A stretch of 64,000 nucleotides of DNA from IMGVR_UViG_3300028840_008160:248001-312000; one strand, 5' to 3'; shown: positions 1,303 to 25,526, counted from the first letter of the stretch. Notes: a model not told the origin generated them from the letters alone. Numbers and translations: made by a program.

Positions 1303-2055
1303 GTGGATATTCAATTAAGTAAAACAATTTCTTATGTCTTGAGACATGGCCCTCACGAGTTTGGTGTTGAACTTGATGATGAAGGTTGGGTAGAACTTGA
1401 TAAATTGTATACAGCATTAGCTAAGCATAGTCGTTTCAAGACTGTCACTGTTCAAGATATTGAAACAATTATTCGTGAATCAAATAAACAACGATTTGAA
1501 TTGAAAAACAACAAAATTCGTGCATTTTATGGCCATTCAATCAAAAAGAAAATACATCGGTCTTCAGTTGTTCCACCCAGCATACTATATCATGGTACAT
1601 CACCAGAAGCAGCAAAGTTAATTTTTGAAAAAGGGCAAGGATTATTGCCTATGGGTCGTCAGCATGTCCATTTAGCATCGACGATCAAGACTGCTATTAT
1701 AACAGGACGAAGAAAAGCAAGAAAGCCTGTGATATTAATTGTTGATGTAGTTGCTGCTCTTGGACATGTCAAATTTTATGCTGGAAATGAAGATATTTGG
1801 TTGGCAGAACCTGTACAAGTTGAGTTTTTGTCAAGATTCGAACCAAGTAAAGTTGTTGTGTCCGAGGGTATTGGTGGTACATGGCACTATCATTTAAGTT
1901 TTGAAAACAGCATTGCTACATCACTGTGCAGTAAACAGACGATGGCTTCGAATTTGTCTAGGAATTCATGGGGAATTAAATCTCACCTTAATGAGCGATA
2001 CTGCAATGAGTGTATAAGCATAGAGCAAAGTGTCATCTCTTTTATAAATTCGTAA
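1303..2055 (+). CDS. kptA: RNA 2'-phosphotransferase (Tpt1/KptA) with a C-terminal Cys/His extension
   Basis: LSKTISYVLRH, IRAFYGHS, LYHGT, PMGRQHVHL. Confidence 0.9.
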   Translation: MDIQLSKTISYVLRHGPHEFGVELDDEGWVELDKLYTALAKHSRFKTVTVQDIETIIRESNKQRFELKNNKIRAFYGHSIKKKIHRSSVVPPSILYHGTSPEAAKLIFEKGQGLLPMGRQHVHLASTIKTAIITGRRKARKPVILIVDVVAALGHVKFYAGNEDIWLAEPVQVEFLSRFEPSKVVVSEGIGGTWHYHLSFENSIATSLCSKQTMASNLSRNSWGIKSHLNERYCNECISIEQSVISFINS

Positions 2056-2072
2056 TACTAAAGGAGATTTCT

Positions 2073-2978
2073 ATGCGACATGCACAAATTCAGCAAGAAT
2101 TTTTGAAATACGCAAAGACATATCGGTTGCATCGTGCAATTGGGTCGACAGCAATGCACGTTTTTCCTTTTGGTTTAGGAGGACAAGCTCTTCTAGAGAC
2201 TGAAGAAAAAGAAGCAGAAGTGATTAGTCTGGTACGTAAGGCTTTAGATTTGGGCGTGAATTATTTTGATACTGCTCCAATGTACGGGCCGAGCAGATAT
2301 TATTTAGGAAAAGCTTTAGGTGTTGACAGAGAATATGTAATACTTGCAAGTAAAGTTTATGAGCGAAGTTATACAGGTGCAAAGAAAGAATTAGATGAAT
2401 CATTTGATTTACTTAAGACTGACTTTATTAATTTAGTTCAATTACATGGAATGGAAAAAGAATCCGACAAACGAGCTTTGCAAAAGAATGGTTCATTACA
2501 ATTATTACTTGATGCACAACGTGCAGGAAAGATTGAATATATTGGTGTGACTGGGCATCACAATTCAAGAATTCTCATTGATTGTTTAGACGCATATGAT
2601 TTTGATACTGTTTTGTTACCCATAAATCCAGCAACACCCGAATTTGACAGTGTGCTTGATATATGTATAGCTAGACATATTGGAATAATTGGAATGAAAG
2701 TTATGTCAAGAGGCATTTTGCCATTGCACATACCTTATGAGAAAATCTTGGCAAATGCATATGACAAATGCGATGTAGCTATTATTGGATGCAGTAGTAA
2801 CCGAGATGTCGAACGTAATGTAGCTGCTACGATGAATCATTTTAAAGTTGACATAAGTGATATGAGTATGTCGGATGAAGTTAGACAAGAAGCTGCATTC
2901 TTTTCAGAGCATTCAAACGCTAGATGGCCAAAAACATATCAACCAAATTTGCCGACGATAGATTTTGAAGATGAATAA
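2073..2978 (+). CDS. Aldo/keto reductase carrying the shared N-terminal leader
   Basis: SD AAGGAG at 2061-2066 favours ATG 2073 ([15 protein letters not shown]); [35 protein letters not shown]. Confidence 0.85.
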
Positions 2979-3265: not shown

Positions 3266-3299
3266 GGGGAGTTTACTGCAGTAGACTCCCCTTTACTTT
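3266..3299 (+). terminator. Intrinsic terminator
   Basis: GGGGAGTTTAC-tgca-GTAGACTCCCC (11 bp, one G-U) then tttacttt. Confidence 0.7.
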
Positions 3300-3344: not shown

Positions 3345-4925
3345 ATGGACATAGAAATTGTTAGGGCATTGCATGAGTTGCACGATTTTGTCAACGAAAA
3401 CACTTCTCAATACTATCATACAAAGCCGCTAGTTTCGTCATCTTCGTCAATCGTTTTACCAACTGCTGTTCATTCGTTTGATGTAGTTTATGGATTGAAA
3501 GATTTGCTTCTTATAGGAGCGATTACTGAAAGTCCAGTGTTAATGACTGGCGGGACTGACCTTGGTAAAACTACATTAGCAAAACTTATGATGAATAGTT
3601 TGTTTGGTAATGATTGGCACAGACTTGATTTTGATCTTGATTTTGGTAAAGATGCATATACAGACATAAGTAGTGATTTCTTTCATGAGAAAGGTAAACG
3701 ATTGTCTGATCTTTACAGTTTACATGATTGGATGCGTTTACCGGGATTTATTGCTGATGAATTGAATGGTGCACATGCTAAGGTTGCAAGAAAAGCGTTA
3801 CATATTATTAAGGAAAAAGACATTACATTGCCAGATGGTAGACGTGCAAAAATAGGACACCCGTTAGATGATTCAGGAAACACATATCAATATCAAATTG
3901 CAACAATAAATGAGGGTAAAGATTATTCTGGTACATTTGATATGGATAAAGCACTGCGCCGGCGTACGACAATAGAAATTCCAATGGATATTTTTAAGCC
4001 AACGCCATTAGATAGATTACTTTTACAAAGGTCAAAGCAAACTGACGTGCAATTTTCAAATTTAGAAAATCATTTGTCAATGGTATTGCATATTCATAGA
4101 CATCTCAATCAATTAAATGTTCATCCAGTAGCAGAGATGTTCCTTGCTTATCTTGAGTCATTTGATTATTGCAAACATTCATTAACCCATGAAAAGTGCA
4201 GTGTAGAATCTAAGAATGGTTCAATTCAACACGTATGCACGCAACCAATTAGAATAGGAGAAACTGCAGCAACTGCAGCTGAACCTATTGGTTGTTTGTT
4301 TATGCGATTATTTGTTAATGAAATGTGTCCAAATGTCAGTGGTATAACTCCCGGTATATCAACTAATCTTGTCGCTGTTGCCCGTGCTTTCGCGCTATTA
4401 AGAGCAGTAAAATTTGTTGAATTAGTTTCTGGTTTTTGTCAAGGACAATTTGAACATCTTCTTAGTTATAAATTGAACAGACATGAATTATTTCGGTCGT
4501 CAATGCAAAAGTATATTGGCGATTATAATATTGATGATAAGCAATTAGCTAAGTTAGTTGTAACAAAATACATAAGTAAACTTGAAGTTGAACAATGCGA
4601 CATTTTGGCTGCAGCACCATTTGTTGCATATTCAAAATTGAATATTAGTTCTATATGGATTCTTAAGCATTATCAAGGAAATAGATTCGGATCTGTAAGT
4701 ACATTTATCAACGAAGCAAATATTAAGTTCAAAGAAGGGTTGTCTAGACCAGAATTTGAACAAATGGAAACTATGATAAAAGGAAATGTATCTAATGAAA
4801 ACATTAGCGAGTTAAAAGCATATTGCGATTCAAGTAATCCGTGGTTATGGCTTGTTATTTCTCCGTATTTGTCAAAATCAAAACCGTTAGATAACGATCA
4901 CATCAAAGCGCTATATGAATCATGA
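3345..4925 (+). CDS. MoxR-like AAA+ ATPase
   Basis: Walker A GGTDLGKTT, Walker B FIADELN, sensor IATINEG, DKALRRR, lid-like VARAFALLR; Cys-rich insert. Confidence 0.75.
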   Translation: MDIEIVRALHELHDFVNENTSQYYHTKPLVSSSSSIVLPTAVHSFDVVYGLKDLLLIGAITESPVLMTGGTDLGKTTLAKLMMNSLFGNDWHRLDFDLDFGKDAYTDISSDFFHEKGKRLSDLYSLHDWMRLPGFIADELNGAHAKVARKALHIIKEKDITLPDGRRAKIGHPLDDSGNTYQYQIATINEGKDYSGTFDMDKALRRRTTIEIPMDIFKPTPLDRLLLQRSKQTDVQFSNLENHLSMVLHIHRHLNQLNVHPVAEMFLAYLESFDYCKHSLTHEKCSVESKNGSIQHVCTQPIRIGETAATAAEPIGCLFMRLFVNEMCPNVSGITPGISTNLVAVARAFALLRAVKFVELVSGFCQGQFEHLLSYKLNRHELFRSSMQKYIGDYNIDDKQLAKLVVTKYISKLEVEQCDILAAAPFVAYSKLNISSIWILKHYQGNRFGSVSTFINEANIKFKEGLSRPEFEQMETMIKGNVSNENISELKAYCDSSNPWLWLVISPYLSKSKPLDNDHIKALYES

Positions 4926-5770
4926 TCAGTCACGATTTTTCAAGAATCAGAGAAGTTTTTCTCGATGAAGTTGGTGATGCAATTGATGACGTTCGCTTTG
5001 AGAACTTCATTAAGCATGCACTTAAGAGCTTTGCAGATAGATATTTGAGAAGCAGGAGCGTTGTTCATCCGCATAGCATATCTTACCGTAATTCTTCAGC
5101 ATCATTATCATTGACAGTTTTTGGTAGCAATGGACAACCTAATATGAGTAGGTGTCGATTTCAAGGTTTTTTCCATGGATGTACTGATGATGTTGTCAAG
5201 CAAATGCCTGAAGCTATTACTGTAGCTGAGTTTGATGAGGAAGCTAACATCAGCAACTTGACACAATTTTTGCAAAAGCATTTAGTGGAATCTGAAGAGA
5301 GAGATGTAACAATTGGTTTGTTAAATGTTCAAAGATCACAAAGACAGCTGAAGAAATTGACATTGCACCCGTTGACGTTAAACATTTGCAAACATATTGT
5401 AGATGAGAAGAAGCGACATAAATTTATGCATGAACGACATCTCGAGCGATCAGTGTCAAGGTTGTTATTTCATGAAGCAACGAAGCTATCACTTAAGCAG
5501 TCTCGTTATGATGATGATAGTATAAGGTCTCAAATACGGTCAGATGATAGGGGTCAATTAGTTCATGAATCATGCATACTTATAAGAAAAAGTAGTGGTT
5601 ACTATTTTTTGGAATATGAAGTACAATCTGCTTCTGAGATAAGATCACTAACAGCAACGACGATGAAAAACGCTATGCACTTTTTCAGCATGGTTCAAAA
5701 CAGTTTTTCATTGGATATGTTAGGTACTATTCAAATGATTGACAGCACTAGGAAAGCAGTCAATGACTGA
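4922..5770 (+). CDS. Hypothetical protein in the AAA-vWA-GHKL operon
   Basis: 282-aa ORF, ATGA overlap with the upstream gene; no motif recognised. Confidence 0.65.
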   Translation: MISHDFSRIREVFLDEVGDAIDDVRFENFIKHALKSFADRYLRSRSVVHPHSISYRNSSASLSLTVFGSNGQPNMSRCRFQGFFHGCTDDVVKQMPEAITVAEFDEEANISNLTQFLQKHLVESEERDVTIGLLNVQRSQRQLKKLTLHPLTLNICKHIVDEKKRHKFMHERHLERSVSRLLFHEATKLSLKQSRYDDDSIRSQIRSDDRGQLVHESCILIRKSSGYYFLEYEVQSASEIRSLTATTMKNAMHFFSMVQNSFSLDMLGTIQMIDSTRKAVND

Positions 5771-7715
5771 CTTAAAACAATTCGTCACGCAAAAATGTGT
5801 CGACTTAATCAAACAAAAAGGTTGGCGACCTTTTCGTGATATAAGTGTTAAGTTTGAAAAAGACACGCCTGCTATGTTTATGGCTGCCTTAGGTATTGCG
5901 ACAAGACGGATTCAGATTACTGTGTATGATGAATCTGACAAAATGATTGAACAGCTTATTAGTCGTTATAGGCTTGAAACTACAACTATGGCTTTAATTG
6001 AAGCAATACTATATTTTTGTGTCGTTCATGAGCATTCGCATCATACTTGTTGTCCAAGAACGAAGGAAAATTTCGAAGCAATTATTGAAGGTGCTTACGA
6101 AGTTGTTAGTACGAAAGAATGCAGGAAAGAACGAATAGAATATGCTTGTTTCAACATTCACAATATGTTTTCAGATACTATTTTGAACGTTGTAAACTCT
6201 CATACTGATACTGATAAGATGGAATATCGTCAAGGTCTTGTTGAAACTTATGACACTGATCTATATTTTTCGTTACAAAAACGCCGACCAACAATTTTGG
6301 GATTTAAAGTTCCTGAATTTATGGAGCCAAAACAAGACAAAGCCATGACGCTATTTCTGCAGTCAATTTTTTTGATGTGCATGGTTGATCATAAGGCTAT
6401 TAGTAGAGTACGACAGCATTTCCCGATAGTATTTCTTGGCAACCAAAGATATCTATATAAGTTGATAACTGTGTTTACTGACGATGAAGAATTAACAGAT
6501 CAATTCATCAATGGGAACGTTGATTCTGCTAAATTGCCAATGTTTTTAGATAGAATTCAAGATACTATGTTATGGAAGCCGATGACTGTTGAATATACTA
6601 AGATTATTTATCAGTTTATGCGTCAACGTTACGATCAATTGAGTAATTCATTCACCAAACCACAACAAGGATCTGGACCGGGACAAGGTGCATCTGGCGG
6701 TCAACAACCACAACAATCTTCAGGTGAAAATCAACAGCAAAGTCAAGCGCAGCGAGCAAAAGACCAAAAAAAGACGGACAAATCGGCAGGGCAAGATGAC
6801 AAGAAGAAAAAGATAGAGAAAGACAAAGATGACAAGAATTCAGTAAAAGACTTTCTTGAGAAATTAGAACAGCAATTGAAAGATCGATTGCCGACGCCGT
6901 CACCGTTGTTGTTGAAATTTCCGCACTTAGACGAACTATACAAGCGCAGAGCAGAAAAGATGATGCTTTCGGCTGAAGTTGGTAATGGGCCTAACCCAGA
7001 GTATGTGTATCACTCTGGAAAAGATCAAATGGCGTTGCAAGAATTTGAGTTCAAAAATGTTGACTGGTCATCAACTGTTGTTGTTGATAATCAAGTGACA
7101 TTATTCAAGCGCGACATGCCGTTTTCGTTGCCTTTTGAAGTCGATGCTAAAGAAGGTAGTTTGCCTGATTTAGCTTTTATATATGACAGTAGTATCAGTA
7201 TGAAATTTGACCCTATAGCAGGAACTGGTGAATATCATTATGCTGTATTAGCATTTTATTCGATCTTGGCTGGGCTTGAATCAAAAGCATTGGCATACTA
7301 TCTGAAATATTTAGCTATAAATTTTTCAGAACGAACAATTTCTTCAGATTGGCAGACTTACAGTCGAATTGATCTTGTTAAGAAGACAATATTTGATTAT
7401 CAACATAATTGCACGGTGCTAGATCCAAAAGCGTTGCGTCATTTGAGAGAGAATAGAAGTGACAATGTAATTGTTTTTATGCTGTCAGACACTGATTTTA
7501 ATTTTGAAGAAAACACTCAAGCATTATTGCAAGAGGTAGATGCAATGATTGGTTGTGGCGGCATTGGGTTGTATTTATTTCAGCTTGGTCCACCAACGAC
7601 ATTTTCAATTGGTATTGAACAACGAGGTTTGCCAGTTCAGTATATTACATCTGCGCAAGACTTCATGAATAAAAGTATACAGTTTACAAAAGATTTGTAT
7701 GGGGAAGTTGTTTAA
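5763..7715 (+). CDS. HExxH metallopeptidase-like N-domain, Q/G/K-rich linker and C-terminal vWA domain
   Basis: VVHEHSHH; linker PQQGSGPGQGASGGQQPQQ; MIDAS DLAFIYDSSISM and VFMLSDTD. Confidence 0.72.
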   Translation: MTDLKQFVTQKCVDLIKQKGWRPFRDISVKFEKDTPAMFMAALGIATRRIQITVYDESDKMIEQLISRYRLETTTMALIEAILYFCVVHEHSHHTCCPRTKENFEAIIEGAYEVVSTKECRKERIEYACFNIHNMFSDTILNVVNSHTDTDKMEYRQGLVETYDTDLYFSLQKRRPTILGFKVPEFMEPKQDKAMTLFLQSIFLMCMVDHKAISRVRQHFPIVFLGNQRYLYKLITVFTDDEELTDQFINGNVDSAKLPMFLDRIQDTMLWKPMTVEYTKIIYQFMRQRYDQLSNSFTKPQQGSGPGQGASGGQQPQQSSGENQQQSQAQRAKDQKKTDKSAGQDDKKKKIEKDKDDKNSVKDFLEKLEQQLKDRLPTPSPLLLKFPHLDELYKRRAEKMMLSAEVGNGPNPEYVYHSGKDQMALQEFEFKNVDWSSTVVVDNQVTLFKRDMPFSLPFEVDAKEGSLPDLAFIYDSSISMKFDPIAGTGEYHYAVLAFYSILAGLESKALAYYLKYLAINFSERTISSDWQTYSRIDLVKKTIFDYQHNCTVLDPKALRHLRENRSDNVIVFMLSDTDFNFEENTQALLQEVDAMIGCGGIGLYLFQLGPPTTFSIGIEQRGLPVQYITSAQDFMNKSIQFTKDLYGEVV

Positions 7716-9373
7716 TGAAAACATATGATATGCCATTGGTTGACTGGATTAGTGTCACTTTGCATAAAGATAGTCTGGCATTTGTACTCAATACTATTCG
7801 TTGCAATAAGCGATTGAAAAGTGATAATATGGAAAACTTCGAATCGAATAAACAATACATGGAGAAAATTCTACGTGAAGAAGTCATTAAGCAATTTAAT
7901 GACTCGAGACGACCGATTCTTGAAGTAATACTAAATTCTATAGATGCAAGACCAAAAACAGAACAGGAGTATGTTGTAAATGTTCAGATGACTAATAAGC
8001 AAGTTACTATAAATGATAATGGTGCAAGTTTGGATTTAGAACAAATTTTGAAGCTATTAATTATTCCATTTAATACAGAAAAAGATGGTATAGAAGAAAT
8101 TGGCAGGTTTGGTGTAGGTTTTCTGTCTAATTTTTACTATTGTGTGAATGATGTTAATGCTCGAATTGTCGTAAAAACAAAAACAAAGTCTGAGCAATAT
8201 CGCATAACATTCTATTGTGAGGATGAAACTGTTGCCGGTTTACGAATGAGACTGAAAAGACTTAGAGGCAAGGGACAAGAAGGAACGAATGTTGACATTC
8301 AATATTTAACATATGACAAGCACGATACATTTGGTTATTTAGAAAAGCATTTAGCTGATATTCCTTCATATATGGCAAAGGTTGTCATTAACAACTCACA
8401 AGTAAATGATAGAACTGAAAATAAATGGTTTGTTAAACCAGTCGAATTAGATATTCGTGGTAGGAAAATTAAACAAACAGTTGGATTACGTATTACAAAC
8501 GATCACAAAATTAGTTTGACATCACAAGGTGTTCTAGTCCAAACACGTTGCTATGAATCAGAATATGAATCAGAAGCATCAAATAAAACACAAACAGCTA
8601 ATATAGGTGCTACGATATCGTTTCCTGCCGCTGTCAAAGTCGTTGAAGGTCGTGATGAATTCAAACTTGATGACAATTTTACAAGGTGCGTTGCTGCTGT
8701 GTTTGAAGCATATGAAGCCTGCATAGTACAATCAAAATTGAATGATGATTTTGTATTTGACATGACAGGTTTGTTTCCTGAATTATTGGCAGCATTTTCA
8801 ATCACTAACATTCACATGATAGCTAATTTGGATGGTATTCGAACTGCATTATTAACGGACAAAAAATACGTACTTACTCGAAGACAGTATGCAATTTTGC
8901 AACCTTTTCTTGGTGAATCATTAGAAAGAGTAGCATTTCGCGCAACAGCTCAAGCATGTAGTTTTTGGATCGAACTATATGAATCAAAGGATGAGTTGAT
9001 GGAAGATTTGTTGACTCCAGTTAACATTTTGTCTAATGGTGTGCTTTTTCATAGTTCTTTGGCTATGCGAAATTTAGTAACACTATCGCAAATACTGGCA
9101 GACATTAAAGAATTTGTGAATGTTTACTTAGTTAACGTGACACCTCATGGTGAAAATCCTATAATGATATTGCCCAAAACTGAAATTGATGAAGCTCGTG
9201 TGTATATTAATTTGTCTCACCCTACGATTATCAATACTCATAAACTTAATGAGTATCAAATCATATGTGATTATTTCTATTTGCCGTTTATACAATCATT
9301 ACATGAGAAAATCACATCACATGATGATGCTGAAAATGAAGCTGTTACATATATCCCAAAGGTTGTTGCTTGA
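7715..9373 (+). CDS. GHKL (Hsp90/MutL/MORC-like) ATPase, soluble
   Basis: ILEVILNSIDA, INDNG, EIGRFGVGF, GTNV. Confidence 0.8.
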   Translation: MKTYDMPLVDWISVTLHKDSLAFVLNTIRCNKRLKSDNMENFESNKQYMEKILREEVIKQFNDSRRPILEVILNSIDARPKTEQEYVVNVQMTNKQVTINDNGASLDLEQILKLLIIPFNTEKDGIEEIGRFGVGFLSNFYYCVNDVNARIVVKTKTKSEQYRITFYCEDETVAGLRMRLKRLRGKGQEGTNVDIQYLTYDKHDTFGYLEKHLADIPSYMAKVVINNSQVNDRTENKWFVKPVELDIRGRKIKQTVGLRITNDHKISLTSQGVLVQTRCYESEYESEASNKTQTANIGATISFPAAVKVVEGRDEFKLDDNFTRCVAAVFEAYEACIVQSKLNDDFVFDMTGLFPELLAAFSITNIHMIANLDGIRTALLTDKKYVLTRRQYAILQPFLGESLERVAFRATAQACSFWIELYESKDELMEDLLTPVNILSNGVLFHSSLAMRNLVTLSQILADIKEFVNVYLVNVTPHGENPIMILPKTEIDEARVYINLSHPTIINTHKLNEYQIICDYFYLPFIQSLHEKITSHDDAENEAVTYIPKVVA

Positions 9374-12300
9374 TGGACAAAGAAAAGCTAATTAAACGAG
9401 AAGTTAGGCGATGTAAAGCTGACGGCGGGCGTGTTTACACGATATCATTAGCTGACTTAGTTATGATGCAAATGGTTGGCGATTTTGATGCGTTTCTTAA
9501 TATGATCGTTTCAAGAACAGATCCTGTAGCAATTGCTCAAGTGATTGAAGATACTAGAAAGAATGTGACAACTCCTCGATTGTTTTCTGGGATTGTAAAT
9601 AAAACTATTGAAGCGCAGTTTGGAAATAAATATGCAACTATTAGAGAATTAGGTCAAAATGCTATTGATTCATATCATTTGTCTGACATTCAAAAACCTG
9701 TAAGATTTCATGTTTGTGGTGATACATCTTATTTAGTATTGAGAATTAGAGATTATGGTTGTGGCATGCAGCTTAAAGATTTAGTAAAAGACTTATTGAT
9801 ACCATACAATTCAGGTAAAGAATTTGATCCTACAAAAATTGGTGAGCATGGTATTGGATGGTATTCAATTGTTGACGTTGCTGATCTTGTTAAAGTGACG
9901 ACGCGAACGCAAGGCGTGACATGTCAAGCTTTGATTTACAATAATGGAGAATGGCAAGCTACAATTCATCCTTTGTCGTCAAATGGTTTTAGTAAGAAGT
10001 TTGATCGTCACGATTTTGGTGGAACTGAAGTAAGTGCTTATGTGCAGTCAATGACAAATAATGATATTATTCATCATTTGTATCAATTTTTGGGAACCGT
10101 AGACAGATCATATGATGTAGTTTATAATAGTCATCAAATAAATTCTGTTGCAGAGACTTATAGAAGAGGTATGCCTGTCGAAACTACAATTAATAAAAAA
10201 CACAAACCTCTTGTCATGAGTGTATCTAAGCGTGAAATCCGCGGCAATTATAGTGACGAACGGTTCAAACACAGAAATCAAAATCTTCATAAAGTACTTT
10301 ACACACAACGTGGGTTATTTATCAAATACGATGATCCAAATTTTGAACAAGAGACCATTCATCATAAACTCATTTTTGACATGATGCAAATGGGTTTAGA
10401 TTTTTGGATTGATATACCTGAACATGTCGGTTTGACAAAAGGTCGAAACAATATTGTTGCTGATCATACTCCTATAGTATTAGACAGTACTTATAAAGCG
10501 TTTGAGAATGTATTTTTGGATATATTACTTGAAGACGATGAAGTATTAGAACACTCTTCTGGTGCATTGATGGCTAGTGTTGCTCAGATTTTTGAAAGAA
10601 AATATGCATTTAGAGTCAGAGAAGTTCAAAAGAATCGATACAGCTTAAAACGACGGATGTCGTCGCTATTTGCTGCTGCGCTAAGCAGTTGTATTGACGC
10701 CATTAGATCTGTGCTGACTGTTTTAGCTACTATGATAAAATTTGCTGTTTGTGATTTGCCAAAATTGTTATGGCAGCTCGGCAAACTCGAGGTTAAACTG
10801 TCAAAAGACGTTTTAGTAAAAACAGCATTTGTGATTGGTATATTGTGCTTCGCTGGTTCTAGTACTTGGGGAGTAATGTTATTGTATAAGTCTTTTGGTT
10901 GGGCGCCGTTTTTATACATGCTTTATTTTCTGATAATTGAAGCAGCTGGTTGTGGTGCATATTATTTGTTAAAAAGTATGCTGAAATATTCTGTTCATTG
11001 CGCAATGGGTTTGCGTGTTGTTTTTCAATATTTGGGGACGAATGCTATACGTGATATAATTGACTTTGGTCGCGGAACAAATGTGATATTTCAAACATTA
11101 ATGCGTAATTTATCATGGGATAAGATGTCTGACATTGGTGTAATGGGAATTTGTTTGATTCCAGTATATATTGCGCTTTGTATTGTACAAATAGTTTGGC
11201 ATACAATTAAGTGGCTAGGGTTGTTGATCGTAAAAGGTTTATGTTCATTGAAACATCCGGCGTTACTAGCACTAAGAGGTTTGCTAATTGCTAAAGTATA
11301 TGTAATTAAGTGGTGGATGGCTGGGCTTCATTTTATTGGTTTGTATATTCACATGGAAGAAAAAAGAGAACGAAAACGTTTAAAGTATTGTAGACGCATA
11401 TCAAAACGATATCTATCATTTATGCATAAAGATGCATTCTTCAAGCGCATTGTACATAAGAAAATGATTAATGCAACAACTTATTATAGTGAAGCAGAAG
11501 CAGCAAGACAAAGAGATGATTCAATGTCATCCATGTTGAGAACGTCATTTGTCGAAACACTTAATGATGTTGCTGGAATATTTTCGTTAAGTGATACACT
11601 GGGGCAACTTATTCCAACGCAAGATTATACTAGTCACAGATATCACGGATTGTCAAAACAAATACAAAAACGTCAGGTGAAGATATCAATTGATGATGTT
11701 ATACAATATTATTTAGAAATGCGATTGAAGTATCAAAAGGACAACAGTAGTTTGACGTTTCATCATGGTGATGTGTTTGTTCAGTACAAGAATCCATTAA
11801 TACAATCAATCATTGATAAAATGGAACAAGTATCTGTCGACATCAGGAATCAGTATGATGTATCAATACTTGAAGATCATTTAGATAACATTGGCGCTGT
11901 ACTTGTACTATTTGGTTTGATGTTTTATTTCATGACAGGTATTGGTTTTGCGCATATGATTTTGAGTTTTATATTTAGATCGCGTGTTAACAATCCATTT
12001 CTCAAAGTCAAGTTCTATATTAAGACGCGTGATTTTATTGTAACATCGGCACGGTGGCTATTTATTGAGAAAAAAGTGCATGTACGATTGGTTCGTTACA
12101 TAATAAGAGGAATTAAGCATTGTATTCGACAAATACCGGACACACTGAATGAGTTAAGAAAGCGCGGTGCTAGTGCATTAAAGATAGTTGTTACATTACC
12201 GTTTATTCTTATAGGCAAAACTGCAAGATTTATGTTTGTTAATGTCATTGTTCCTGTTTGTTGCATGCTTAATCCATTAAGATATCCAACGTACGTAGCA

Positions 12301-13344
12301 TTTGTGTTCGAAAAAGTGTCAATTACAGTTATAGATTTTTTTAGGAACATTAGACAACCATCTCGACAACAGGCTAAGCAAAATCATGATGGATATATAG
12401 CAAAACAAAAAGAAACTGAGCGAGCAAAAGTTAAGCAGTCAAAAAAGATGTTGAAAGCTTTGCTAAAAAATGCGAGCATGTTTGAAAAGTTTTATCATTC
12501 ATGGGTTGAATGGTTTCATAATTCAGCTTTGTTCTATTTCTTTGGTGATGGTTCTTATCGAGGTAAAGATTTTGAAGGAATGTCAAAAGCAAAACTTGCT
12601 AATATTGTTCAATTAGTACGAGTAGCTAAAGGATATTACGATTATTACTGTATGATTGAAGCAATGGATGAAGAAATTTGTAGAGCATTACACAAAAAAT
12701 TATACAAGATATCATTTACTCATCATAATAGACTTTCTCATGTACATAGTCATATGATAGCATTAGATAGAGATTTACAAGTTAATATAGGCGCATCGCC
12801 TAACTATGCTACGCCTGTAATACAATCATATTTTAGATCACAAACATTTGATCACAAATCTGAGAAATCAATTGAAACTTTTGCATTACATTTAATGGAT
12901 GCAATGATTCATTTAAGAGCACATCGTCATGCTAGTGACGCAATGCAAAAACAGCATTCGATTACATTTCATAAAGAGAAAGTCGAGTTAAGACGGAGAG
13001 TCGTTAAGTATTTTCTCGAGAACAATATTAGACCATTAGATATTGTTAAAAGACATTTAGGCACAAATGAAGAAATAGAAGATGTATTTTACAAACTAGA
13101 TAGTGTCGAATTTTCATGTTTAGCGAAGATGACAATTAGACGTTTGAAACATGAAAAGTTAAAATATGATGTTGCACGCGAACAAATAAGGTTAGAGAAA
13201 GAGGAACAAAAAAGAAAAGCTGCTGAACGTAAGGCAGAAGAAGCTAAGGAGAAACAAGAAGAAGAGAAAAAGAAACAAGAAGAAAAAGAGGAAAAGAAGG
13301 TCGAGGAGATTGTCGCAAGGATTAACAGACTCCAAGTCATATGA
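9370..13344 (+). CDS. Large GHKL ATPase with two hydrophobic (multi-TM) regions and a charged coiled-coil tail
   Basis: IRELGQNAIDS, RDYGCGM, IGEHGIGW, GGTEV; hydrophobic stretches at about aa 430-660 and 840-990; EEKKKQEE-type tail. Confidence 0.8.
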   Translation: MMDKEKLIKREVRRCKADGGRVYTISLADLVMMQMVGDFDAFLNMIVSRTDPVAIAQVIEDTRKNVTTPRLFSGIVNKTIEAQFGNKYATIRELGQNAIDSYHLSDIQKPVRFHVCGDTSYLVLRIRDYGCGMQLKDLVKDLLIPYNSGKEFDPTKIGEHGIGWYSIVDVADLVKVTTRTQGVTCQALIYNNGEWQATIHPLSSNGFSKKFDRHDFGGTEVSAYVQSMTNNDIIHHLYQFLGTVDRSYDVVYNSHQINSVAETYRRGMPVETTINKKHKPLVMSVSKREIRGNYSDERFKHRNQNLHKVLYTQRGLFIKYDDPNFEQETIHHKLIFDMMQMGLDFWIDIPEHVGLTKGRNNIVADHTPIVLDSTYKAFENVFLDILLEDDEVLEHSSGALMASVAQIFERKYAFRVREVQKNRYSLKRRMSSLFAAALSSCIDAIRSVLTVLATMIKFAVCDLPKLLWQLGKLEVKLSKDVLVKTAFVIGILCFAGSSTWGVMLLYKSFGWAPFLYMLYFLIIEAAGCGAYYLLKSMLKYSVHCAMGLRVVFQYLGTNAIRDIIDFGRGTNVIFQTLMRNLSWDKMSDIGVMGICLIPVYIALCIVQIVWHTIKWLGLLIVKGLCSLKHPALLALRGLLIAKVYVIKWWMAGLHFIGLYIHMEEKRERKRLKYCRRISKRYLSFMHKDAFFKRIVHKKMINATTYYSEAEAARQRDDSMSSMLRTSFVETLNDVAGIFSLSDTLGQLIPTQDYTSHRYHGLSKQIQKRQVKISIDDVIQYYLEMRLKYQKDNSSLTFHHGDVFVQYKNPLIQSIIDKMEQVSVDIRNQYDVSILEDHLDNIGAVLVLFGLMFYFMTGIGFAHMILSFIFRSRVNNPFLKVKFYIKTRDFIVTSARWLFIEKKVHVRLVRYIIRGIKHCIRQIPDTLNELRKRGASALKIVVTLPFILIGKTARFMFVNVIVPVCCMLNPLRYPTYVAFVFEKVSITVIDFFRNIRQPSRQQAKQNHDGYIAKQKETERAKVKQSKKMLKALLKNASMFEKFYHSWVEWFHNSALFYFFGDGSYRGKDFEGMSKAKLANIVQLVRVAKGYYDYYCMIEAMDEEICRALHKKLYKISFTHHNRLSHVHSHMIALDRDLQVNIGASPNYATPVIQSYFRSQTFDHKSEKSIETFALHLMDAMIHLRAHRHASDAMQKQHSITFHKEKVELRRRVVKYFLENNIRPLDIVKRHLGTNEEIEDVFYKLDSVEFSCLAKMTIRRLKHEKLKYDVAREQIRLEKEEQKRKAAERKAEEAKEKQEEEKKKQEEKEEKKVEEIVARINRLQVI

Positions 13345-14143: not shown

Positions 14144-15154
14144 ATGACACGAGAAGAATTTAGACAGCAAGTATTCATTCGTGATAGTTATAAGTGTGTC
14201 GTGTGTCGACAATCGGCTGTTGATGCGCATCATATTATAGATCGCAGTTTGTGGTTTGATGGCGGTTATTATTTAGACAATGGTGTAAGTCTTTGCGAAC
14301 AGCATCATCTCGAAGCAGAGAAAACATTAATATCATGTGAACGTTTAAGAGTTTTGGCTAATATTGTTAATCATCTCTATCCTGAACATTTTTATCAAGA
14401 TGAGAAATATGACAAATGGGGAAACATATGTTTACCATCTGGAGCTAGAATAAAAGGCGAATTATTTAGCAATGAAAATGTGCAACAAATTTTAAGAGAC
14501 GCTGGTCAGTTAGATTCATTCTTACCATACATTAAATACCCTCGCACATATCATTTTCCATGGTCTGAGAATCTTAAAAATGATGATAGAATGCATTCTA
14601 ATGTCGATTTTTTTGAAGGCAAAGAAGTTGTTGCTACGATTAAAATGGATGGTGAAAACACGTCCATGTATAGAGATTACATTCATGCAAGATCAGTAGA
14701 TTCAAAGCATCATTTATCGAGAAGTTTAGTAAAACAAATTCATGCAACAATTGCTTTTGACATTCCAGAAGGTTGGCGAATTTGCGGCGAAAATATGTAT
14801 GCTAAGCATTCAATACATTATCATAATTTAAAAAGCTACTTTTATTTGTTTTCAATTTGGAATGAATTTAATATAGCATTAGATTGGAATTCAACATTAG
14901 ATTGGGCAAAATTGTTAGGTCTTAATGTTGTTCCCGTTTTTTACAGAGGACAATGGAATAGAGAAATAATTCATAACGCATATGAACAATTTGAATCATT
15001 TGATGAAAAAGAAGGGTATGTAGTTAGAGTAGTTGGAGAAATTTCGTATAAAGATTTTAGACATTCATTTGGCAAATTTGTACGAAAAAATCATGTACAA
15101 ACTAGTCAATTTTGGATGACGCAACCAGTAGTGCCAAATGAGGTTTTAGTATGA
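14144..15154 (+). CDS. HNH-domain / RNA ligase (Rnl2-like adenylyltransferase) fusion
   Basis: N-terminal CVVC...DAHHIIDR...NGVSLCEQHH; ligase KYPRTYH, KMDGEN, CGENMYAKHSIHY, EGYVVR, KFVR. Confidence 0.85.
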   Translation: MTREEFRQQVFIRDSYKCVVCRQSAVDAHHIIDRSLWFDGGYYLDNGVSLCEQHHLEAEKTLISCERLRVLANIVNHLYPEHFYQDEKYDKWGNICLPSGARIKGELFSNENVQQILRDAGQLDSFLPYIKYPRTYHFPWSENLKNDDRMHSNVDFFEGKEVVATIKMDGENTSMYRDYIHARSVDSKHHLSRSLVKQIHATIAFDIPEGWRICGENMYAKHSIHYHNLKSYFYLFSIWNEFNIALDWNSTLDWAKLLGLNVVPVFYRGQWNREIIHNAYEQFESFDEKEGYVVRVVGEISYKDFRHSFGKFVRKNHVQTSQFWMTQPVVPNEVLV

Positions 15155-16047
15155 GAACAATTTGGATGATAAAAGGTATTAGTAGTAGTGGTAAGTCGAC
15201 TTGGGCGCTTGAACAAATGCGAAAGTATCCAGGCCGCTATAAAAGAGTCAATCGTGATTTGTTGAGAGAGATGATTGACGGAAATGCTCTTAGTACTGAA
15301 AATGAAGCATTTTTAAAACGAATTCGAGATTTGTTTATTGAAAAAACTTTATTGCAAGAACATGACATTATTATTGATGATATGAATTTGAACAATGATA
15401 ATTGGAAAACTGTTTGTGATATTGCTTCGCTTATAGGCGATGTAAGAGTTGTTGAAAAATATTTTGAAGTATCATTAAAAGATGCATTGACGAGGAACGC
15501 ATCGAGAAGTAAGCCAGTGCCAGAACACATATTGGAAAATCAATATAAACGATATGTTAGAAATAAACATATTCAAGTGAGAGATGAATATTTTCCGCCG
15601 GTTATTGTAGATTTTACAATTGATCCAAAGAAAAAAATGGCTGCAATTGTCGATATTGATGGCACAATTGCTATGAAGTATAGTGATCGCAGTTATTTTG
15701 ATTTAGAACGTGTTGAAGAAGATACTTTAAATGAACATATATCGACACTTATTGATCTATTAGTTTTAAACGGCAACATGGACATTTTGCTTGTGTCAGG
15801 TCGAGCCGATTTTAATAAAGACAAGACTGAAGCATGGTTACAACAAACTAAACCACACTATGACAAACTTTTTATGAGACGTACTGGTGACCGTCGACCA
15901 GATTGGATTGTAAAGAAAGAAATTTACGAAGATCAAATCAAACCGCATTATAATGTGTTATATGTCATAGATGATAGGCCAATTGTTTGCAGGATGTGGC
16001 GAAACATGGGATTGACAGTTTTGCAAATCAATGATAAAGAAGTTTGA
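15151..16047 (+). CDS. pseT: T4-like polynucleotide 5'-kinase/3'-phosphatase
   Basis: P-loop GISSSGKST, RVNRD; HAD DIDGT, VSGR, DDRP. Confidence 0.9.
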   Translation: MRTIWMIKGISSSGKSTWALEQMRKYPGRYKRVNRDLLREMIDGNALSTENEAFLKRIRDLFIEKTLLQEHDIIIDDMNLNNDNWKTVCDIASLIGDVRVVEKYFEVSLKDALTRNASRSKPVPEHILENQYKRYVRNKHIQVRDEYFPPVIVDFTIDPKKKMAAIVDIDGTIAMKYSDRSYFDLERVEEDTLNEHISTLIDLLVLNGNMDILLVSGRADFNKDKTEAWLQQTKPHYDKLFMRRTGDRRPDWIVKKEIYEDQIKPHYNVLYVIDDRPIVCRMWRNMGLTVLQINDKEV

Positions 16048-24380: not shown

Positions 24381-25526
24381 GTGAATCATAAAGCACTTAT
24401 TCAACAAGAATTCGAGAAAGTAGCACGTAAGTGGAATGATCTTACGTTGGAAGAGCAAAAAGCGTATCTTAAGAGACATCCTGCATCTAAACGTCGGCTT
24501 ACTGCTAAACCAAGAAGTAAGATACTAACTAAAAGTGAAGAATTAAAAAGAAAAATGCCTAGTCAAAGGATTAAAGAACGTAGGACAAAAGTTAAGCTGG
24601 ATGAGATGCGAGGTGTCGCAAGATTTCATGATCATCTTAGTCGACTTGAAAAATTAGCTGACAAAAATAGTTTAAACCGGCAAAAACTCGTATGGGTTCT
24701 TAATAATGCTCTTAAAAGTAAACGGCCTAGTGGTGGTAAACCAAGAACATATGGTATGTATGATTGGGGTAAAAATAAAGAAGTAGCTAAGAAGCTAGAT
24801 GTTGTTGTCAATAAAATAGCAGATGCTGTTAATGACATGGATGATAGACATTATGGTGCTAATAAAGCTGCTAAAGAATGGATCAACAATCATTTTTATG
24901 TTGAACGTAATGTAAGTGGTAAGAAAACTCCAAAAAGTATTAAAGAAATACGAGAATCAAAACCAAAGAAGTCAAAAGTAGTGAAGAAAAGTAAGACACC
25001 TGAGCATGTGACTACTGGTGATCGTGTAAGTTTTAGTTCTCGCAAAGGTCATATTGAAGGAACAATTACTGACGTTAGACATGGTAATAAATACATTAAG
25101 TATTTAGTCGAAACAGATGATGGACAACATTGGTGGGTAAAACGTCGTGAATCTGGTTATGCTCATGCTGGAATGAAATATTTAGGTAAAACATCTGAAA
25201 AAGATGCTAAACGGCTTCAGACTAACAGACAAGAATTTGATCAAGCATTGCAACACGAAAAACATGAGCGAACTCTCGATGGTCGAGAAAAACTTGAGCA
25301 GTTAGGTGTTCAAAGAGGTGACACAGTAACAATTAAAGGCACTAGATATAATTGGACAGCAAAAGTTATGGATATAGATTATCACAAAGGTGGTGTACGG
25401 ATAGATCAAGAAAGAACTAGACGTCAACGAGGCAGTTGGTTTAGTGATGTTCCTGGAAAGGTGACAACGCATTATAGATTTATACCTGCAAGGTTTATAA
25501 TAAGTTCAAGGAGAGAGGAGATTTGA
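24381..25526 (+). CDS. Leader-family basic protein with RHPxSKR module and two SH3/KOW-like barrels
   Basis: MNHKALIQQEFEKVARKWNDLTLEEQKAYLKRHPASKRR; TGDRVSF...EGTITDV and RGDTVTI...TAKVMDI. Confidence 0.7.
   Translation: MNHKALIQQEFEKVARKWNDLTLEEQKAYLKRHPASKRRLTAKPRSKILTKSEELKRKMPSQRIKERRTKVKLDEMRGVARFHDHLSRLEKLADKNSLNRQKLVWVLNNALKSKRPSGGKPRTYGMYDWGKNKEVAKKLDVVVNKIADAVNDMDDRHYGANKAAKEWINNHFYVERNVSGKKTPKSIKEIRESKPKKSKVVKKSKTPEHVTTGDRVSFSSRKGHIEGTITDVRHGNKYIKYLVETDDGQHWWVKRRESGYAHAGMKYLGKTSEKDAKRLQTNRQEFDQALQHEKHERTLDGREKLEQLGVQRGDTVTIKGTRYNWTAKVMDIDYHKGGVRIDQERTRRQRGSWFSDVPGKVTTHYRFIPARFIISSRREEI

What the first reader, a model, noticed from the sequence alone, without database searches (positions are those of the whole stretch)
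3345..13344. Five-gene translationally coupled operon: MoxR AAA+, unknown, HExxH-vWA, GHKL, membrane GHKL
Seen: every junction overlaps (ATGA, 8 nt, TAATG, TGATG) across 10 kb, after a terminator, in a region otherwise made of small genes. Established: MoxR AAA+ proteins work with vWA partners as chaperones, and some MoxR-vWA ternary operons are described as conflict systems. I do not recognise a described system that pairs this core with two Hsp90/MORC-like GHKL ATPases and a metallopeptidase motif. Inference: an undescribed ATP-driven remodelling or proteolysis machine at the membrane, for superinfection exclusion, anti-defence or a captured defence system.
Basis: partly seen in the sequence, partly recalled or inferred. 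Interest (0 to 1): 0.8.

Follow-up and report, generated by a model that had tools for sequence, protein, structure and literature searches.

The report
MoxR–vWA–double Hsp90-like operon in phage
A jumbo phage carries an intact ten-kilobase, five-gene cassette that otherwise occurs mainly in tiny DPANN archaea and joins a MoxR ATPase, a protease-tagged vWA partner and two very divergent Hsp90-like ATPases; no described system has this combination and its role is still unknown.

Summary
Five + strand genes (3345-13344) follow a terminator-like hairpin and overlap at all four junctions.

- **g1** is a divergent MoxR-type AAA+ ATPase.
- **g2** is a fast-evolving protein that matched nothing.
- **g3** has an invariant HExxH N-domain with a zincin-like predicted fold, a disordered linker and a vWA domain with a complete MIDAS motif.
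- **g4 and g5** are paralogues of each other. They are best described as very divergent Hsp90-like ATPases rather than MORC-like ones. g4 matches HtpG and TRAP1 over its whole length.
- **g5** adds a long C-terminal region that is strongly hydrophobic in the phage copies.

The same gene order occurs in every related locus long enough to show it. These are Woesearchaeota, Pacearchaeota and Nanoarchaeota MAGs, two Acidobacteriota, and one related phage contig. Flanking genes differ from locus to locus, so the cassette is self-contained and probably mobile. In a quick g1 tree the two phage copies sit inside the clade dominated by archaeal sequences.

PADLOC, Pfam, NCBIfam, PHROGs and nine literature searches found no described system with this composition. 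My best reading is an ATP-driven protein remodelling and processing complex, membrane-tethered in the phage. Its biological role (conflict, or assembly and proteostasis) is not resolved.

The parts
3266..3291 (+). Terminator-like hairpin upstream of the operon, followed by TTTACTTTGA
   Evidence: 11-bp stem with 6 G-C pairs and a 4-nt loop. Sequence read.
3345..4925 (+). g1: divergent MoxR-type AAA+ ATPase, 526 aa. Walker A is GGTDLGKT (nt 3549-3572). Walker B is in the stretch PGFIADELNG (nt 3741-3770). Other invariant residues are N189 (in ATINEG) and R207 (in ALRRRT, where R205 and R206 are nearly invariant). An insert after the core carries four invariant Cys (C276, C298, C317, C328).
   Evidence: The family profile's best PDB sequence match is 2r44 (E 5.5e-8 over positions 57-271), which I recall, not checked here, to be a MoxR-type ATPase structure; Midasin also matches. 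Some homologues carry PF07728 and JGI names some 'MoxR-like ATPase'. Invariant columns. The window protein itself gets no Pfam hit.
4922..5770 (+). g2: 282-aa protein of unknown fold. Its position is conserved but its sequence evolves fast (14-25% identity to the cellular orthologues, 53% to the related phage). Only the N-terminal FSRIxELF-like motif is semi-conserved.
   Evidence: positional orthologues of 227-282 aa in 14 loci. No hit in Pfam, PHROGs, NCBIfam, PADLOC or the ESM Atlas.
5763..7715 (+). g3: 650 aa. The N-domain (residues 1-290) has invariant HExxH (HEHSH within nt 6018-6059) followed by invariant C97-P98, plus N134, D138 and N142. The segments 296-359, 371-376, 402-420 and 452-464 are modelled with pLDDT below 50. 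The C-terminal vWA domain (residues 468-650) has MIDAS D475-S-S477-I-S479 (within nt 7179-7205), T551 and D576.
   Evidence: Alignments. AF2 model: pLDDT 76, both domains about 87-88. Foldseek against PDB matches vWA/MIDAS domains (MDN1 8ql1_C at 8.7e-5, integrin I-domains, BatB, NorQD 9qhg_G). 11 of 33 distant family members hit Pfam VWA. The N-domain's structural neighbours include Peptidase_U49, M48 and DUF4344 clusters at TM about 0.5.
7715..9373 (+). g4: 552-aa soluble Hsp90-like ATPase with an N-M-C arrangement. Bergerat motifs are LEVILNSIDA (N74, D77), NDNG (D101, G103), IGRFGVGFLS (G130, G133, G135, S138) and GT (T191). The middle region has an invariant G312-R313-D314 motif.
   Evidence: Pfam HATPase_c_3 at 6.9e-7. 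The profile's best PDB sequence matches are HtpG, TRAP1 and Hsp90. AF2 model: pLDDT 84.8, pTM 0.79. The Foldseek PDB top 50 are all Hsp90-family entries, at E 1e-17 to 1e-11; full-length chains align over about 600-690 columns. In the viral library the best matches are a giant-virus Hsp90 and phage rIIA models at about 1e-13.
9373..13344 (+). g5: 1323 aa. The N-terminal 440 aa or so is a paralogue of the g4 N+M region (RELGQNAID, RDYGCGM, IGEHGIGWYS, GGTEV, KGRNN). It is followed by a variable region with hydrophobic segments (residues 476-535, 588-622, 836-862 and 932-962; nt 10798-12258) and a K/E-rich helical tail (from nt 13135).
   Evidence: BLASTP of g4 against the g5 N-terminus: 21% identity over 445 aa, E 6e-11. 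Shared invariant columns. The profile matches Hsp82/Hsp90 N-domains at 1.1e-10. Hydropathy peaks reach 2.57 in the phage copy and are weaker in archaeal orthologues.

Best explanation
The region is a self-contained five-gene cassette encoding an ATP-driven protein remodelling and processing complex built from chaperone-type parts. It occurs mainly in DPANN archaea and was captured by a lineage of jumbo phages.

**Shown**
- g1 is a MoxR-type AAA+ ATPase.
- g3 is its vWA/MIDAS partner, fused to an N-terminal HExxH domain with a zincin-like predicted fold.
- g4 and g5 are paralogous, highly divergent Hsp90-like GHKL ATPases.
- g5 carries a long, partly hydrophobic C-terminal region.
- g2 is a rapidly diverging fifth subunit.

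**Inferred mechanism**
- g4 and g5 form an ATP-gated heterodimeric Hsp90-type clamp. In the phage version the C-terminal segments of g5 tether it to the membrane.
- The g1 hexamer is recruited through the MIDAS face of g3, as in the other MoxR-vWA pairs I recall (RavA-ViaA, NorQ-NorD, CbbQ-CbbO).
- g1 remodels a client held by the clamp, or feeds it to the g3 HExxH domain for cleavage.
- g2 supplies specificity, or is itself the processed substrate.

**Likely role in the phage.** The cassette sits among RNA-repair counter-defence genes (Tpt1-like, RNA ligase, polynucleotide kinase), and g4 resembles rIIA in fold. So I lean towards a conflict role, such as protecting infection against a host response at the membrane or excluding competitors. 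This last step has the least support.
For: - **Composition:**
- **Conserved five-gene synteny with variable flanks** in DPANN, Acidobacteriota and a related phage. The g1 and g4 families have similar sizes (69 and 59 clusters at 90% identity), which fits one-to-one co-occurrence.
- **Catalytic motifs intact** in both phage copies.
- **A simpler relative exists:** a g3 relative next to an upstream 534-aa gene, with no g2 and no GHKL gene. This suggests the GHKL pair and g2 were added to a two-gene core.
- **Patchy, cross-domain distribution**, with the phage copies nested in the clade dominated by archaeal sequences (SH-aLRT 99-100 in a quick tree).
- **Phage context of RNA-repair genes:**
- **Fold similarity to rIIA:**
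- **A MoxR plus metallopeptidase-vWA pair** is already reported in group 2.2 jumbo phages (PMC7824862).
Against: - There is no expression or interaction data. No RNA run was listed.
- Peptidase activity is inferred only from the HExxH motif and a TM of about 0.5 to predicted peptidase clusters. The third metal ligand is not identified.
- The membrane anchoring of g5 is weak in archaeal orthologues.
- There are no PADLOC hits beyond GHKL-level similarity to TmtA.
- Archaeal flanks are mostly housekeeping genes.
- There is no classical toxic effector.
- The apparent g3-g4 fusion in L019 is probably an assembly artefact, so there is no Rosetta-stone evidence for contacts between the proteins.
Confidence: 0.5

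Rival explanations
1. It is a dedicated assembly or proteostasis chaperone system with no conflict role. MoxR-vWA plus the Hsp90-like pair fold or assemble large or membrane-bound complexes: virion or tail parts in the phage, surface or attachment structures in DPANN cells. The HExxH domain carries out maturation cleavage.
For: All recognisable parts are chaperone-type. The jumbo-phage MoxR plus metallopeptidase-vWA pair was proposed to act in virion assembly, and a MoxR-vWA system is reported as required for tail assembly of the Acidianus two-tailed virus (PMC7824862). Archaeal flanks are housekeeping genes. HSP90 appears to have emerged in bacteria and was likely transferred horizontally to archaea (PMC8166112), so a private Hsp90-like pair could fill a gap in small archaeal genomes.
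Against: The cassette is rare and patchy, with only 59-69 clusters at 90% identity. Only one IMG/VR contig carries it, and GenBank phages gave no match. So it is not a core morphogenesis function. g2 and the C-terminus of g5 evolve fast. In the phage the operon is not next to recognisable structural genes.
Confidence: 0.27
2. It is a cellular anti-virus (abortive infection) system carried by the phage for superinfection exclusion. The MoxR-vWA core sets a threshold. On sensing infection, the HExxH peptidase or the hydrophobic g5 protein acts as the effector: Lit-like cleavage of a host factor, or membrane damage.
For: MoxR-vWA cores regulate the ternary conflict systems described in PMC7159879 and PMC8195603. 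The structural neighbours of the g3 N-domain include clusters carrying Peptidase_U49, the Pfam family I recall as that of the Lit phage-exclusion protease. The cassette is mobile and patchy and crosses domains. An integrase, TPR-CHAT genes or a MazE gene lie nearby in some loci. g2 evolves fast.
Against: There is no PADLOC match beyond the GHKL core. There is no VMAP or iSTAND third component and no effector C-terminal to the vWA domain. Most loci are not in defence islands. Hsp90-like clamps are not known effectors.
Confidence: 0.15
3. It is an enzyme-activation or metal-centre insertion module of the CobS/CobT, NorQ/NorD or CbbQ/CbbO type, in which MoxR-vWA remodels one specific enzyme and the Hsp90-like pair assists.
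For: vWA fold matches include the NorQD complex. Feature-based neighbours of the g3 N-domain include viral clusters in which 15% of members carry the CobT family.
Against: No conserved client enzyme gene lies next to the cassette in any locus; flanks differ everywhere. Such systems have no HExxH domain or GHKL pair.
Confidence: 0.05
4. It is an assembly chimera or a decaying captured fragment with no function in the phage.
For: The source is a metagenomic contig, and no transcript data are available.
Against: All five ORFs are intact and all catalytic motifs are present. A related phage contig from another sample has the same operon at 53-75% amino-acid identity, with the same flanking small ORFs. 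The upstream junction is contiguous in the contigs of two listed runs.
Confidence: 0.03

Closest known systems
MoxR-vWA chaperone/co-chaperone pairs (RavA-ViaA, NorQ-NorD, CbbQ-CbbO, CobS-CobT, the MoxR-vWA system of Acidianus two-tailed virus)
   Same: A MoxR-type AAA+ gene is linked to a gene for a vWA protein with a complete MIDAS motif. The vWA fold matches MDN1-MIDAS and NorQD.
   Different: g1 is 526 aa, with a Cys-bearing insert and a long C-terminal extension. A fast-evolving gene sits between the pair. The vWA protein has an N-terminal HExxH domain. Two Hsp90-like genes are always attached. No client enzyme gene is linked.
MoxR plus metallopeptidase-vWA pair of group 2.2 jumbo phages (Iyer et al. 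2021, PMC7824862)
   Same: The two-protein architecture is the same (MoxR, then a vWA protein with an N-terminal metallopeptidase domain), and it occurs in a jumbo phage.
   Different: GenBank phages gave no sequence match for g1, g3 or g4. Here the pair is part of a five-gene cassette whose relatives are archaeal. Homology to the published pair was not tested directly.
Hsp90 / HtpG / TRAP1 chaperones
   Same: The Bergerat motifs are present. The g4 model aligns with full-length HtpG, TRAP1, GRP94 and Hsp90 (E down to 1e-17). The g4 and g5 profiles hit only Hsp90-family N-domains among the matches listed.
   Different: The proteins are extremely divergent: 20.8 bits against the 455-bit cutoff of the NCBIfam HSP90 model. 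There are two paralogues, one of which replaces the C-domain with about 880 aa of hydrophobic and charged sequence. They are encoded in a MoxR-vWA operon.
Phage T4-type rIIA (GHKL, membrane-associated protector against prophage-induced early lysis)
   Same: The g4 model matches many predicted rIIA structures at E about 1e-13. rIIA has an N-terminal GHKL domain and a variable C-terminal domain (PMC7824862). The phage g5 is hydrophobic.
   Different: No rIIA family was hit in PHROGs. No rIIB-like partner was recognised. The relatives are cellular and archaeal rather than phage.
vWA-MoxR ternary conflict systems (VMAP, iSTAND, TERNS3; Kaur et al. 2020 and 2021)
   Same: They have a MoxR-vWA core plus extra, rapidly varying components, and they are mobile and patchy.
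   Different: Those systems place effectors C-terminal to the vWA domain and have VMAP, iSTAND or TERNS3 third components, mostly in multicellular bacteria. Here the extra domain is N-terminal, the partners are Hsp90-like, and the hosts are DPANN archaea.

Membership tests
MoxR-type AAA+ ATPase (g1) | Walker A, Walker B (hhhhDE), and conserved Asn and Arg residues at the positions I take for sensor 1 and the arginine finger | tested here: met
   G69-T76, E139, N189 and R207 are invariant across 29 homologues, and D138 is nearly invariant. Residues checked in the window sequence. The sensor-1 and Arg-finger roles are my assignment from general knowledge of AAA+ proteins.
MoxR-type AAA+ ATPase (g1) | Closest similarity to MoxR / AAA_5-AAA_3 models rather than to other AAA+ clades | tested here: inconclusive
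   The profile's best PDB match is 2r44 at 5.5e-8, ahead of ClpB/ClpC at 1e-4 to 1e-5. A few homologues carry PF07728. The window protein itself has no Pfam hit.
vWA domain with MIDAS (g3 C-terminus) | DxSxS...T...D metal-ion-dependent adhesion site | tested here: met
   D475, S477, S479 and D576 are invariant and T551 is nearly invariant.
vWA domain with MIDAS (g3 C-terminus) | vWA (Rossmann-like alpha/beta) fold | tested here: met
   AF2 C-domain pLDDT is about 87. In the Foldseek PDB search every match listed at E up to 1e-3 is a vWA or MIDAS domain. 11 of 33 distant relatives pass the E-value limit for Pfam VWA, though the window protein does not.
Zincin-like metallopeptidase (g3 N-terminus) | HExxH in a helix that follows a small beta-sheet | tested here: met
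   H89, E90 and H93 are invariant in 19 sequences. The model has strands at 27-55 and then helix 75-92, which carries the motif.
Zincin-like metallopeptidase (g3 N-terminus) | An identified third zinc ligand and a fold match to a solved peptidase | tested here: inconclusive
   The candidates are C97 and D138, both invariant, but neither is assigned. Only predicted-model neighbours (Peptidase_U49, M48, DUF4344) match, at TM about 0.5. The PDB search was dominated by the vWA domain.
Hsp90 family (g4, g5) | Bergerat-fold motifs I-IV | tested here: met
   N74, D77, D101, G103, G130, G133, G135, S138 and T191 are invariant across both paralogues. The catalytic Glu (E70) is nearly invariant; Gln replaces it in two orthologues.
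Hsp90 family (g4, g5) | N-M-C domain architecture | tested here: met
   For g4, the Foldseek top 50 are all Hsp90-family entries, and full-length chains align over about 600-690 columns. g5 shares only the N and M parts.
Hsp90 family (g4, g5) | Score above curated family thresholds | tested here: not met
   NCBIfam HSP90 PRK14083 gives 20.8 bits against a 455-bit cutoff. The sacsin-type model NF047352 gives 36 and 26 bits against a 50-bit cutoff. The proteins are Hsp90-like, not canonical members.
Hsp90 family (g4, g5) | Middle-domain catalytic arginine and C-terminal dimerisation | not testable with these tools
   An invariant G-R motif (R313 in g4, R358 in g5) is a candidate. No residue-level superposition or multimer prediction was available.
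Phage rIIA | Sequence membership in rIIA families | tested here: not met
   There is no PHROG hit for g4 or g5 at E<0.01. Only fold-level similarity was found.
Known anti-phage defence systems (PADLOC-DB 2.0) | Any component matching a system model | tested here: not met
   Only g4 matches TmtA models, over about 70-100 residues of the GHKL core (E 1e-5). g1, g2, g3 and g5 match nothing.
vWA-MoxR ternary conflict systems (VMAP/iSTAND/TERNS3) | A VMAP, iSTAND or TERNS3 third component, and an effector C-terminal to the vWA domain | tested here: not met
   g3 ends with the vWA domain, so no C-terminal effector is present. g2 and the Hsp90-like pair match no known family in Pfam, NCBIfam or PADLOC. 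Dedicated VMAP or iSTAND profiles were not available.

The most novel reading that the evidence does not exclude
The cassette is a previously unrecognised class of prokaryotic and viral machine in which a heterodimeric, membrane-docked Hsp90-type clamp is mechanically coupled to a MoxR AAA+ motor and a vWA-tethered zincin. It would be the first Hsp90-like system native to DPANN archaea. A jumbo phage would use it as a new counter-defence or exclusion device, functionally analogous to the still unexplained rIIA/rIIB system.
Probability: 0.2. Interest if true: 0.85.

Novelty: new variant of a known kind. Interest (0 to 1): 0.62.

Why it matters
MoxR-vWA pairs and Hsp90 are both widespread, but none of the searches run here found them described as one genetic unit. 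A conserved operon that joins them with a HExxH domain predicts a physical and functional coupling between two different ATP-driven remodelling machines.

It also gives some DPANN archaea a private Hsp90-like pair. These organisms have very small genomes, and HSP90 is thought to have reached archaea by horizontal transfer from bacteria (PMC8166112). Spending about 10 kb, roughly 1% of such a genome, on this cassette implies a strong benefit.

The cassette's capture by a jumbo phage, next to RNA-repair counter-defence genes, offers an experimentally tractable entry point. The fold similarity of g4 to rIIA could also help with the long-standing question of what rII proteins do.

Tried and rejected
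- **Megablast and tblastn of the region, g1, g3 and g4 against GenBank phages:** no match.
- **IMG/VR scans with g1 and with the g1 family profile:** only the window's own contig.
- **Pfam, PHROGs, NCBIfam and PADLOC on the window proteins:** only weak GHKL hits. A phrog_345 hit on g3 lies in the low-complexity linker, and I disregarded it.
- **g2:** no similarity by any method. The ESM Atlas model has pLDDT 0.32. I ran no further search on it.
- **g5 C-terminal region in the Atlas:** nothing above noise.
- **g3 profile against PDB sequences:** only spurious hits. The fold had to be tested by AF2 and Foldseek.
- **Apparent g3-g4 fusion in L019:** rejected as evidence for an interaction, because that MAG contig has frameshifts and N runs.
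- **MORC-like reading of the GHKL genes:** rejected. All the top sequence and structure matches listed are Hsp90-family.
- **Bat/aerotolerance operon:** considered and rejected. Pfam found no DUF58 or TPR component among the five proteins, and the only link is generic vWA fold similarity to BatB.
- **RNA evidence:** no RNA run was listed. `read laying` could only confirm DNA contiguity.
- **dN/dS between the two phage copies:** not attempted, because synonymous sites would be saturated at 53-75% amino-acid identity.
- **The careful maximum-likelihood tree:** did not finish in the time allowed. Only the quick tree is reported.

Full report
**Observation**

The ORF scan and the junction sequences confirm five consecutive + strand genes:
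- g1: 3345-4925
- g2: 4922-5770
- g3: 5763-7715
- g4: 7715-9373
- g5: 9373-13344

The mechanical list starts g3 at TTG 5739, but alignment with orthologues supports ATG 5763. The mechanical list starts g5 at TTG 9370; I take the ATG at 9373 as the start.

A terminator-like hairpin with an 11-bp stem lies at 3266-3291. No such site follows g5. Neighbouring ORFs are small, 74-336 aa.

**What the window is**

- The window is identical to part of IMG/VR contig IMGVR_UViG_3300028840_008160, which is 329.8 kb long. The same protein is also on a 335.7-kb contig.
- It has about 34% G+C and is almost entirely coded on one strand.
- It has no tRNA or Rfam hits.
- Most of the proteins I scanned match no known family.
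- The recognisable genes are phage-like. They include an RNA ligase with an HNH-like N-terminal part, whose relatives at 45-52% identity are in jumbo phages of 310-485 kb, and a T4-type polynucleotide kinase.
- A related 105-kb contig (L005) shares the operon and its flanking small ORFs. Its flanks also carry a Tpt1-like gene, a prokaryotic YEATS gene and an RlaP gene.
- I did not see capsid or terminase genes inside the window. 'Jumbo phage' is therefore well supported but not proven.

**The five proteins**

*g1.* The window protein has no Pfam hit. A profile of 29 homologues has invariant Walker A (G69-T76), E139 of Walker B (D138 is nearly invariant), N189 and R207. I read N189 and R207 as sensor 1 and the arginine finger. 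The profile's best PDB sequence match is 2r44, which I recall to be a MoxR-type ATPase, at E 5.5e-8; Midasin also matches. A few homologues carry PF07728, and JGI names some of them MoxR-like ATPase. Four invariant cysteines lie in an insert after the AAA+ core.

*g3.* It has no sequence-level match to any family. The alignment shows invariant H89-E90-x-x-H93, then C97-P98, and a full MIDAS signature: D475-x-S477-x-S479, T551 and D576.
- An AF2 model has pLDDT 76, with both folded domains at about 87-88.
- Its C-domain matches only vWA or MIDAS structures at E up to 1e-3. These include MDN1-MIDAS, integrin I-domains, BatB and the NorQD complex.
- An exhaustive profile search found 594 family representatives. 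Of 33 distant ones, 11 hit Pfam VWA.
- The nearest predicted-structure neighbours of the N-domain include clusters carrying Peptidase_U49, M48 and DUF4344, at TM about 0.5. They also include archaeal and bacterial proteins with the same N-domain-plus-vWA architecture.
- The HExxH/zincin reading is therefore supported at lead level, and the vWA reading firmly.

*g4.* It hits Pfam HATPase_c_3 and has all the Bergerat motifs. Its AF2 model (pLDDT 84.8, pTM 0.79) matches only Hsp90-family entries in the top 50 PDB hits. These include HtpG, TRAP1, GRP94 and cytosolic Hsp90, at E down to 1e-17. Full-length chains align over about 600-690 columns, which covers the N, M and C domains.

*g5.* Its first 440 residues or so are a paralogue of the g4 N+M region: 21% identity over 445 aa, E 6e-11. 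The two share invariant motif residues and a G-R motif in the middle region. Its profile hits Hsp82/Hsp90 N-domains at 1.1e-10. The remaining 880 residues or so vary between orthologues. In the two phage copies this part has strong hydrophobic peaks, with Kyte-Doolittle values up to 2.57. In archaeal copies the matching segments are glycine-rich and only weakly hydrophobic. So 'membrane GHKL' is safe for the phage copy and uncertain elsewhere.

*g2.* It matched nothing. It is conserved in position and size (227-282 aa) but hardly in sequence.

**Distribution**

g1 has 69 homologous clusters at 90% identity and g4 has 59. Where a source names the organism, they come from the following:
- Woesearchaeota, Pacearchaeota and Nanoarchaeota MAGs;
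- a Blastocatellia genome (1.31-Mb contig), a Bryobacteraceae MAG and another Acidobacteria MAG;
- single contigs binned as Methanosarcinales, or labelled only as archaeon.

In eight distinct loci with enough downstream sequence, all five genes are present in the same order and tightly spaced. In six shorter contigs the order holds up to the contig end. No counter-example was seen.

Flanks differ in every cellular locus. They include fumarase, a cation ATPase, EF-1alpha with ribosomal protein S10, Met-tRNA synthetase, TPR-CHAT genes and an integrase. The cassette is therefore self-contained.

The small ORFs after g5 in the window are shared only with the related phage contig. One more distant g3 relative has only an upstream 534-aa gene as neighbour, with no g2 and no GHKL gene. 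Another variant lacks a recognisable GHKL gene. This suggests that g2 and the Hsp90-like pair were added to a two-gene core.

In a quick maximum-likelihood tree of g1, the two phage sequences form a pair nested within a 19-sequence clade that contains archaeal MAG proteins (SH-aLRT 99-100). The Acidobacteriota form a separate clade. The root is a midpoint root, and the five most divergent homologues fall at the base. The careful tree search did not finish, and many neighbouring sequences have no taxonomy. The direction of transfer into the phage is therefore likely but not formally tested.

**Mechanism**

*Shown.* The cassette contains a MoxR-type motor, a MIDAS-bearing vWA partner with a HExxH domain, two paralogous Hsp90-like ATPases, one of which has a hydrophobic extension, and one orphan subunit. 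All are co-inherited as a unit with their catalytic motifs intact.

*Inferred from what I know of the families.* I recall GHKL clamps acting as ATP-gated dimers, so g4 and g5 probably heterodimerise. I recall MoxR hexamers engaging their vWA partners, which suggests that g1 and g3 form the second sub-complex. The permanent linkage of the two pairs suggests hand-over of a client between clamp and motor, with optional cleavage by the HExxH domain. g2 could be an adaptor or a substrate.

*Biological role.* This is unresolved.
- A conflict role is suggested by several points: patchiness, mobility across domains, the fast-evolving g2 and g5 tail, the phage's RNA-repair neighbourhood, Lit-like structural neighbours of g3, and the fold similarity of g4 to rIIA.
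- An assembly or proteostasis role is suggested by the all-chaperone composition, the housekeeping flanks in archaea, and the published proposal for MoxR plus metallopeptidase-vWA pairs in jumbo phages (PMC7824862).

**Comparison with known systems**

The g1-g3 pair resembles known MoxR-vWA pairs, and specifically the metallopeptidase-vWA variant noted in group 2.2 jumbo phages. I found no sequence match to GenBank phages.

g4 and g5 are Hsp90-like by motif, profile and fold. They fall far below the curated family thresholds, so I do not file them as Hsp90 family members.

Nothing matches a PADLOC system. The published vWA-MoxR ternary systems have different third components and a different effector placement. 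Nine literature searches found no paper that links MoxR-vWA with an Hsp90-like or GHKL pair, or that describes this cassette in DPANN archaea.

**Verdict**

This is a real, conserved and apparently undescribed five-gene module. It is a new variant built on a MoxR-vWA core, with two Hsp90-like paralogues attached. It is native mainly to DPANN archaea and was captured by a jumbo phage.

Confidence in the composition is high, in the complex-level mechanism moderate, and in the biological role low.

Noticed in passing
window 1303-2055, 14144-15154, 15151-16047, 41099-41713: The operon sits inside an RNA-repair cluster. It contains a Tpt1-like 2'-phosphotransferase, an RNA ligase with an HNH-like N-terminal part (phrog_24030, relatives only in jumbo phages), a T4-type polynucleotide kinase (phrog_505) and a second RNA-ligase-like ORF. 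I recall T4 polynucleotide kinase and RNA ligase repairing tRNA cut by a host anticodon nuclease, so this looks like a counter-defence cluster.
   Followed up: partly
window 60277-61440: A single ORF fuses a cytidylyltransferase-like domain (PF01467) to dephospho-CoA kinase (PF01121). That would put the last two steps of CoA synthesis in one phage protein.
   Followed up: no
window 2010-2978: An aldo/keto reductase gene lies between two ORFs that are adjacent in the related phage contig L005. It looks like a recent insertion just upstream of the operon.
   Followed up: partly
window 34883-35863 and 51617-52453: Two ORFs both match the same PHROG 'peptidase' family (phrog_16701), so they may be paralogues.
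   Followed up: no
window 24381-25526 and 45814-47463: There is a weak CDC48_N-like hit in one ORF and a classical AAA (PF00004) domain in another, so the phage has further AAA-type machinery.
   Followed up: no
L022:727-8957: A contig binned as Desulfobacterales encodes a 1512-aa ORF with both Rpb2 and Rpb1 RNA-polymerase domains. It is followed by a 296-aa ORF, an AAA_5 MoxR-like gene and a 495-aa ORF. It looks like a phage contig that was mis-binned.
   Followed up: no
L019:2773-12342: The UBA10216 Woesearchaeota contig has g1 and g5 split by frameshifts and an N run at the g3/g4 junction. Its apparent g3-g4 fusion ORF of 1275 aa is probably an artefact.
   Followed up: partly
L027:7389-11142: A distant relative of the cassette has only two genes (534 aa and 713 aa), with no g2 and no GHKL genes. 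It lies next to rubrerythrin and desulfoferrodoxin genes.
   Followed up: partly
L003:485-8375: In the Blastocatellia genome the cassette lies directly downstream of a run of TPR and TPR-CHAT (caspase-like) genes, which may be a separate conflict system.
   Followed up: no
window 4170-4328 (g1 residues 276-328): Four cysteines are invariant across the g1 family, in an insert after the AAA+ core. They may form a metal-binding or redox site.
   Followed up: no
window 12900-13134 (g5 C-terminal region, approximate) and the matching columns of alignment A4: A semi-conserved L-x-D-x3-H-x3-H...H...K-x2-LR pattern appears near the C-terminus of the g5 orthologues. Its meaning is unknown, and I did not map its coordinates exactly.
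   Followed up: no
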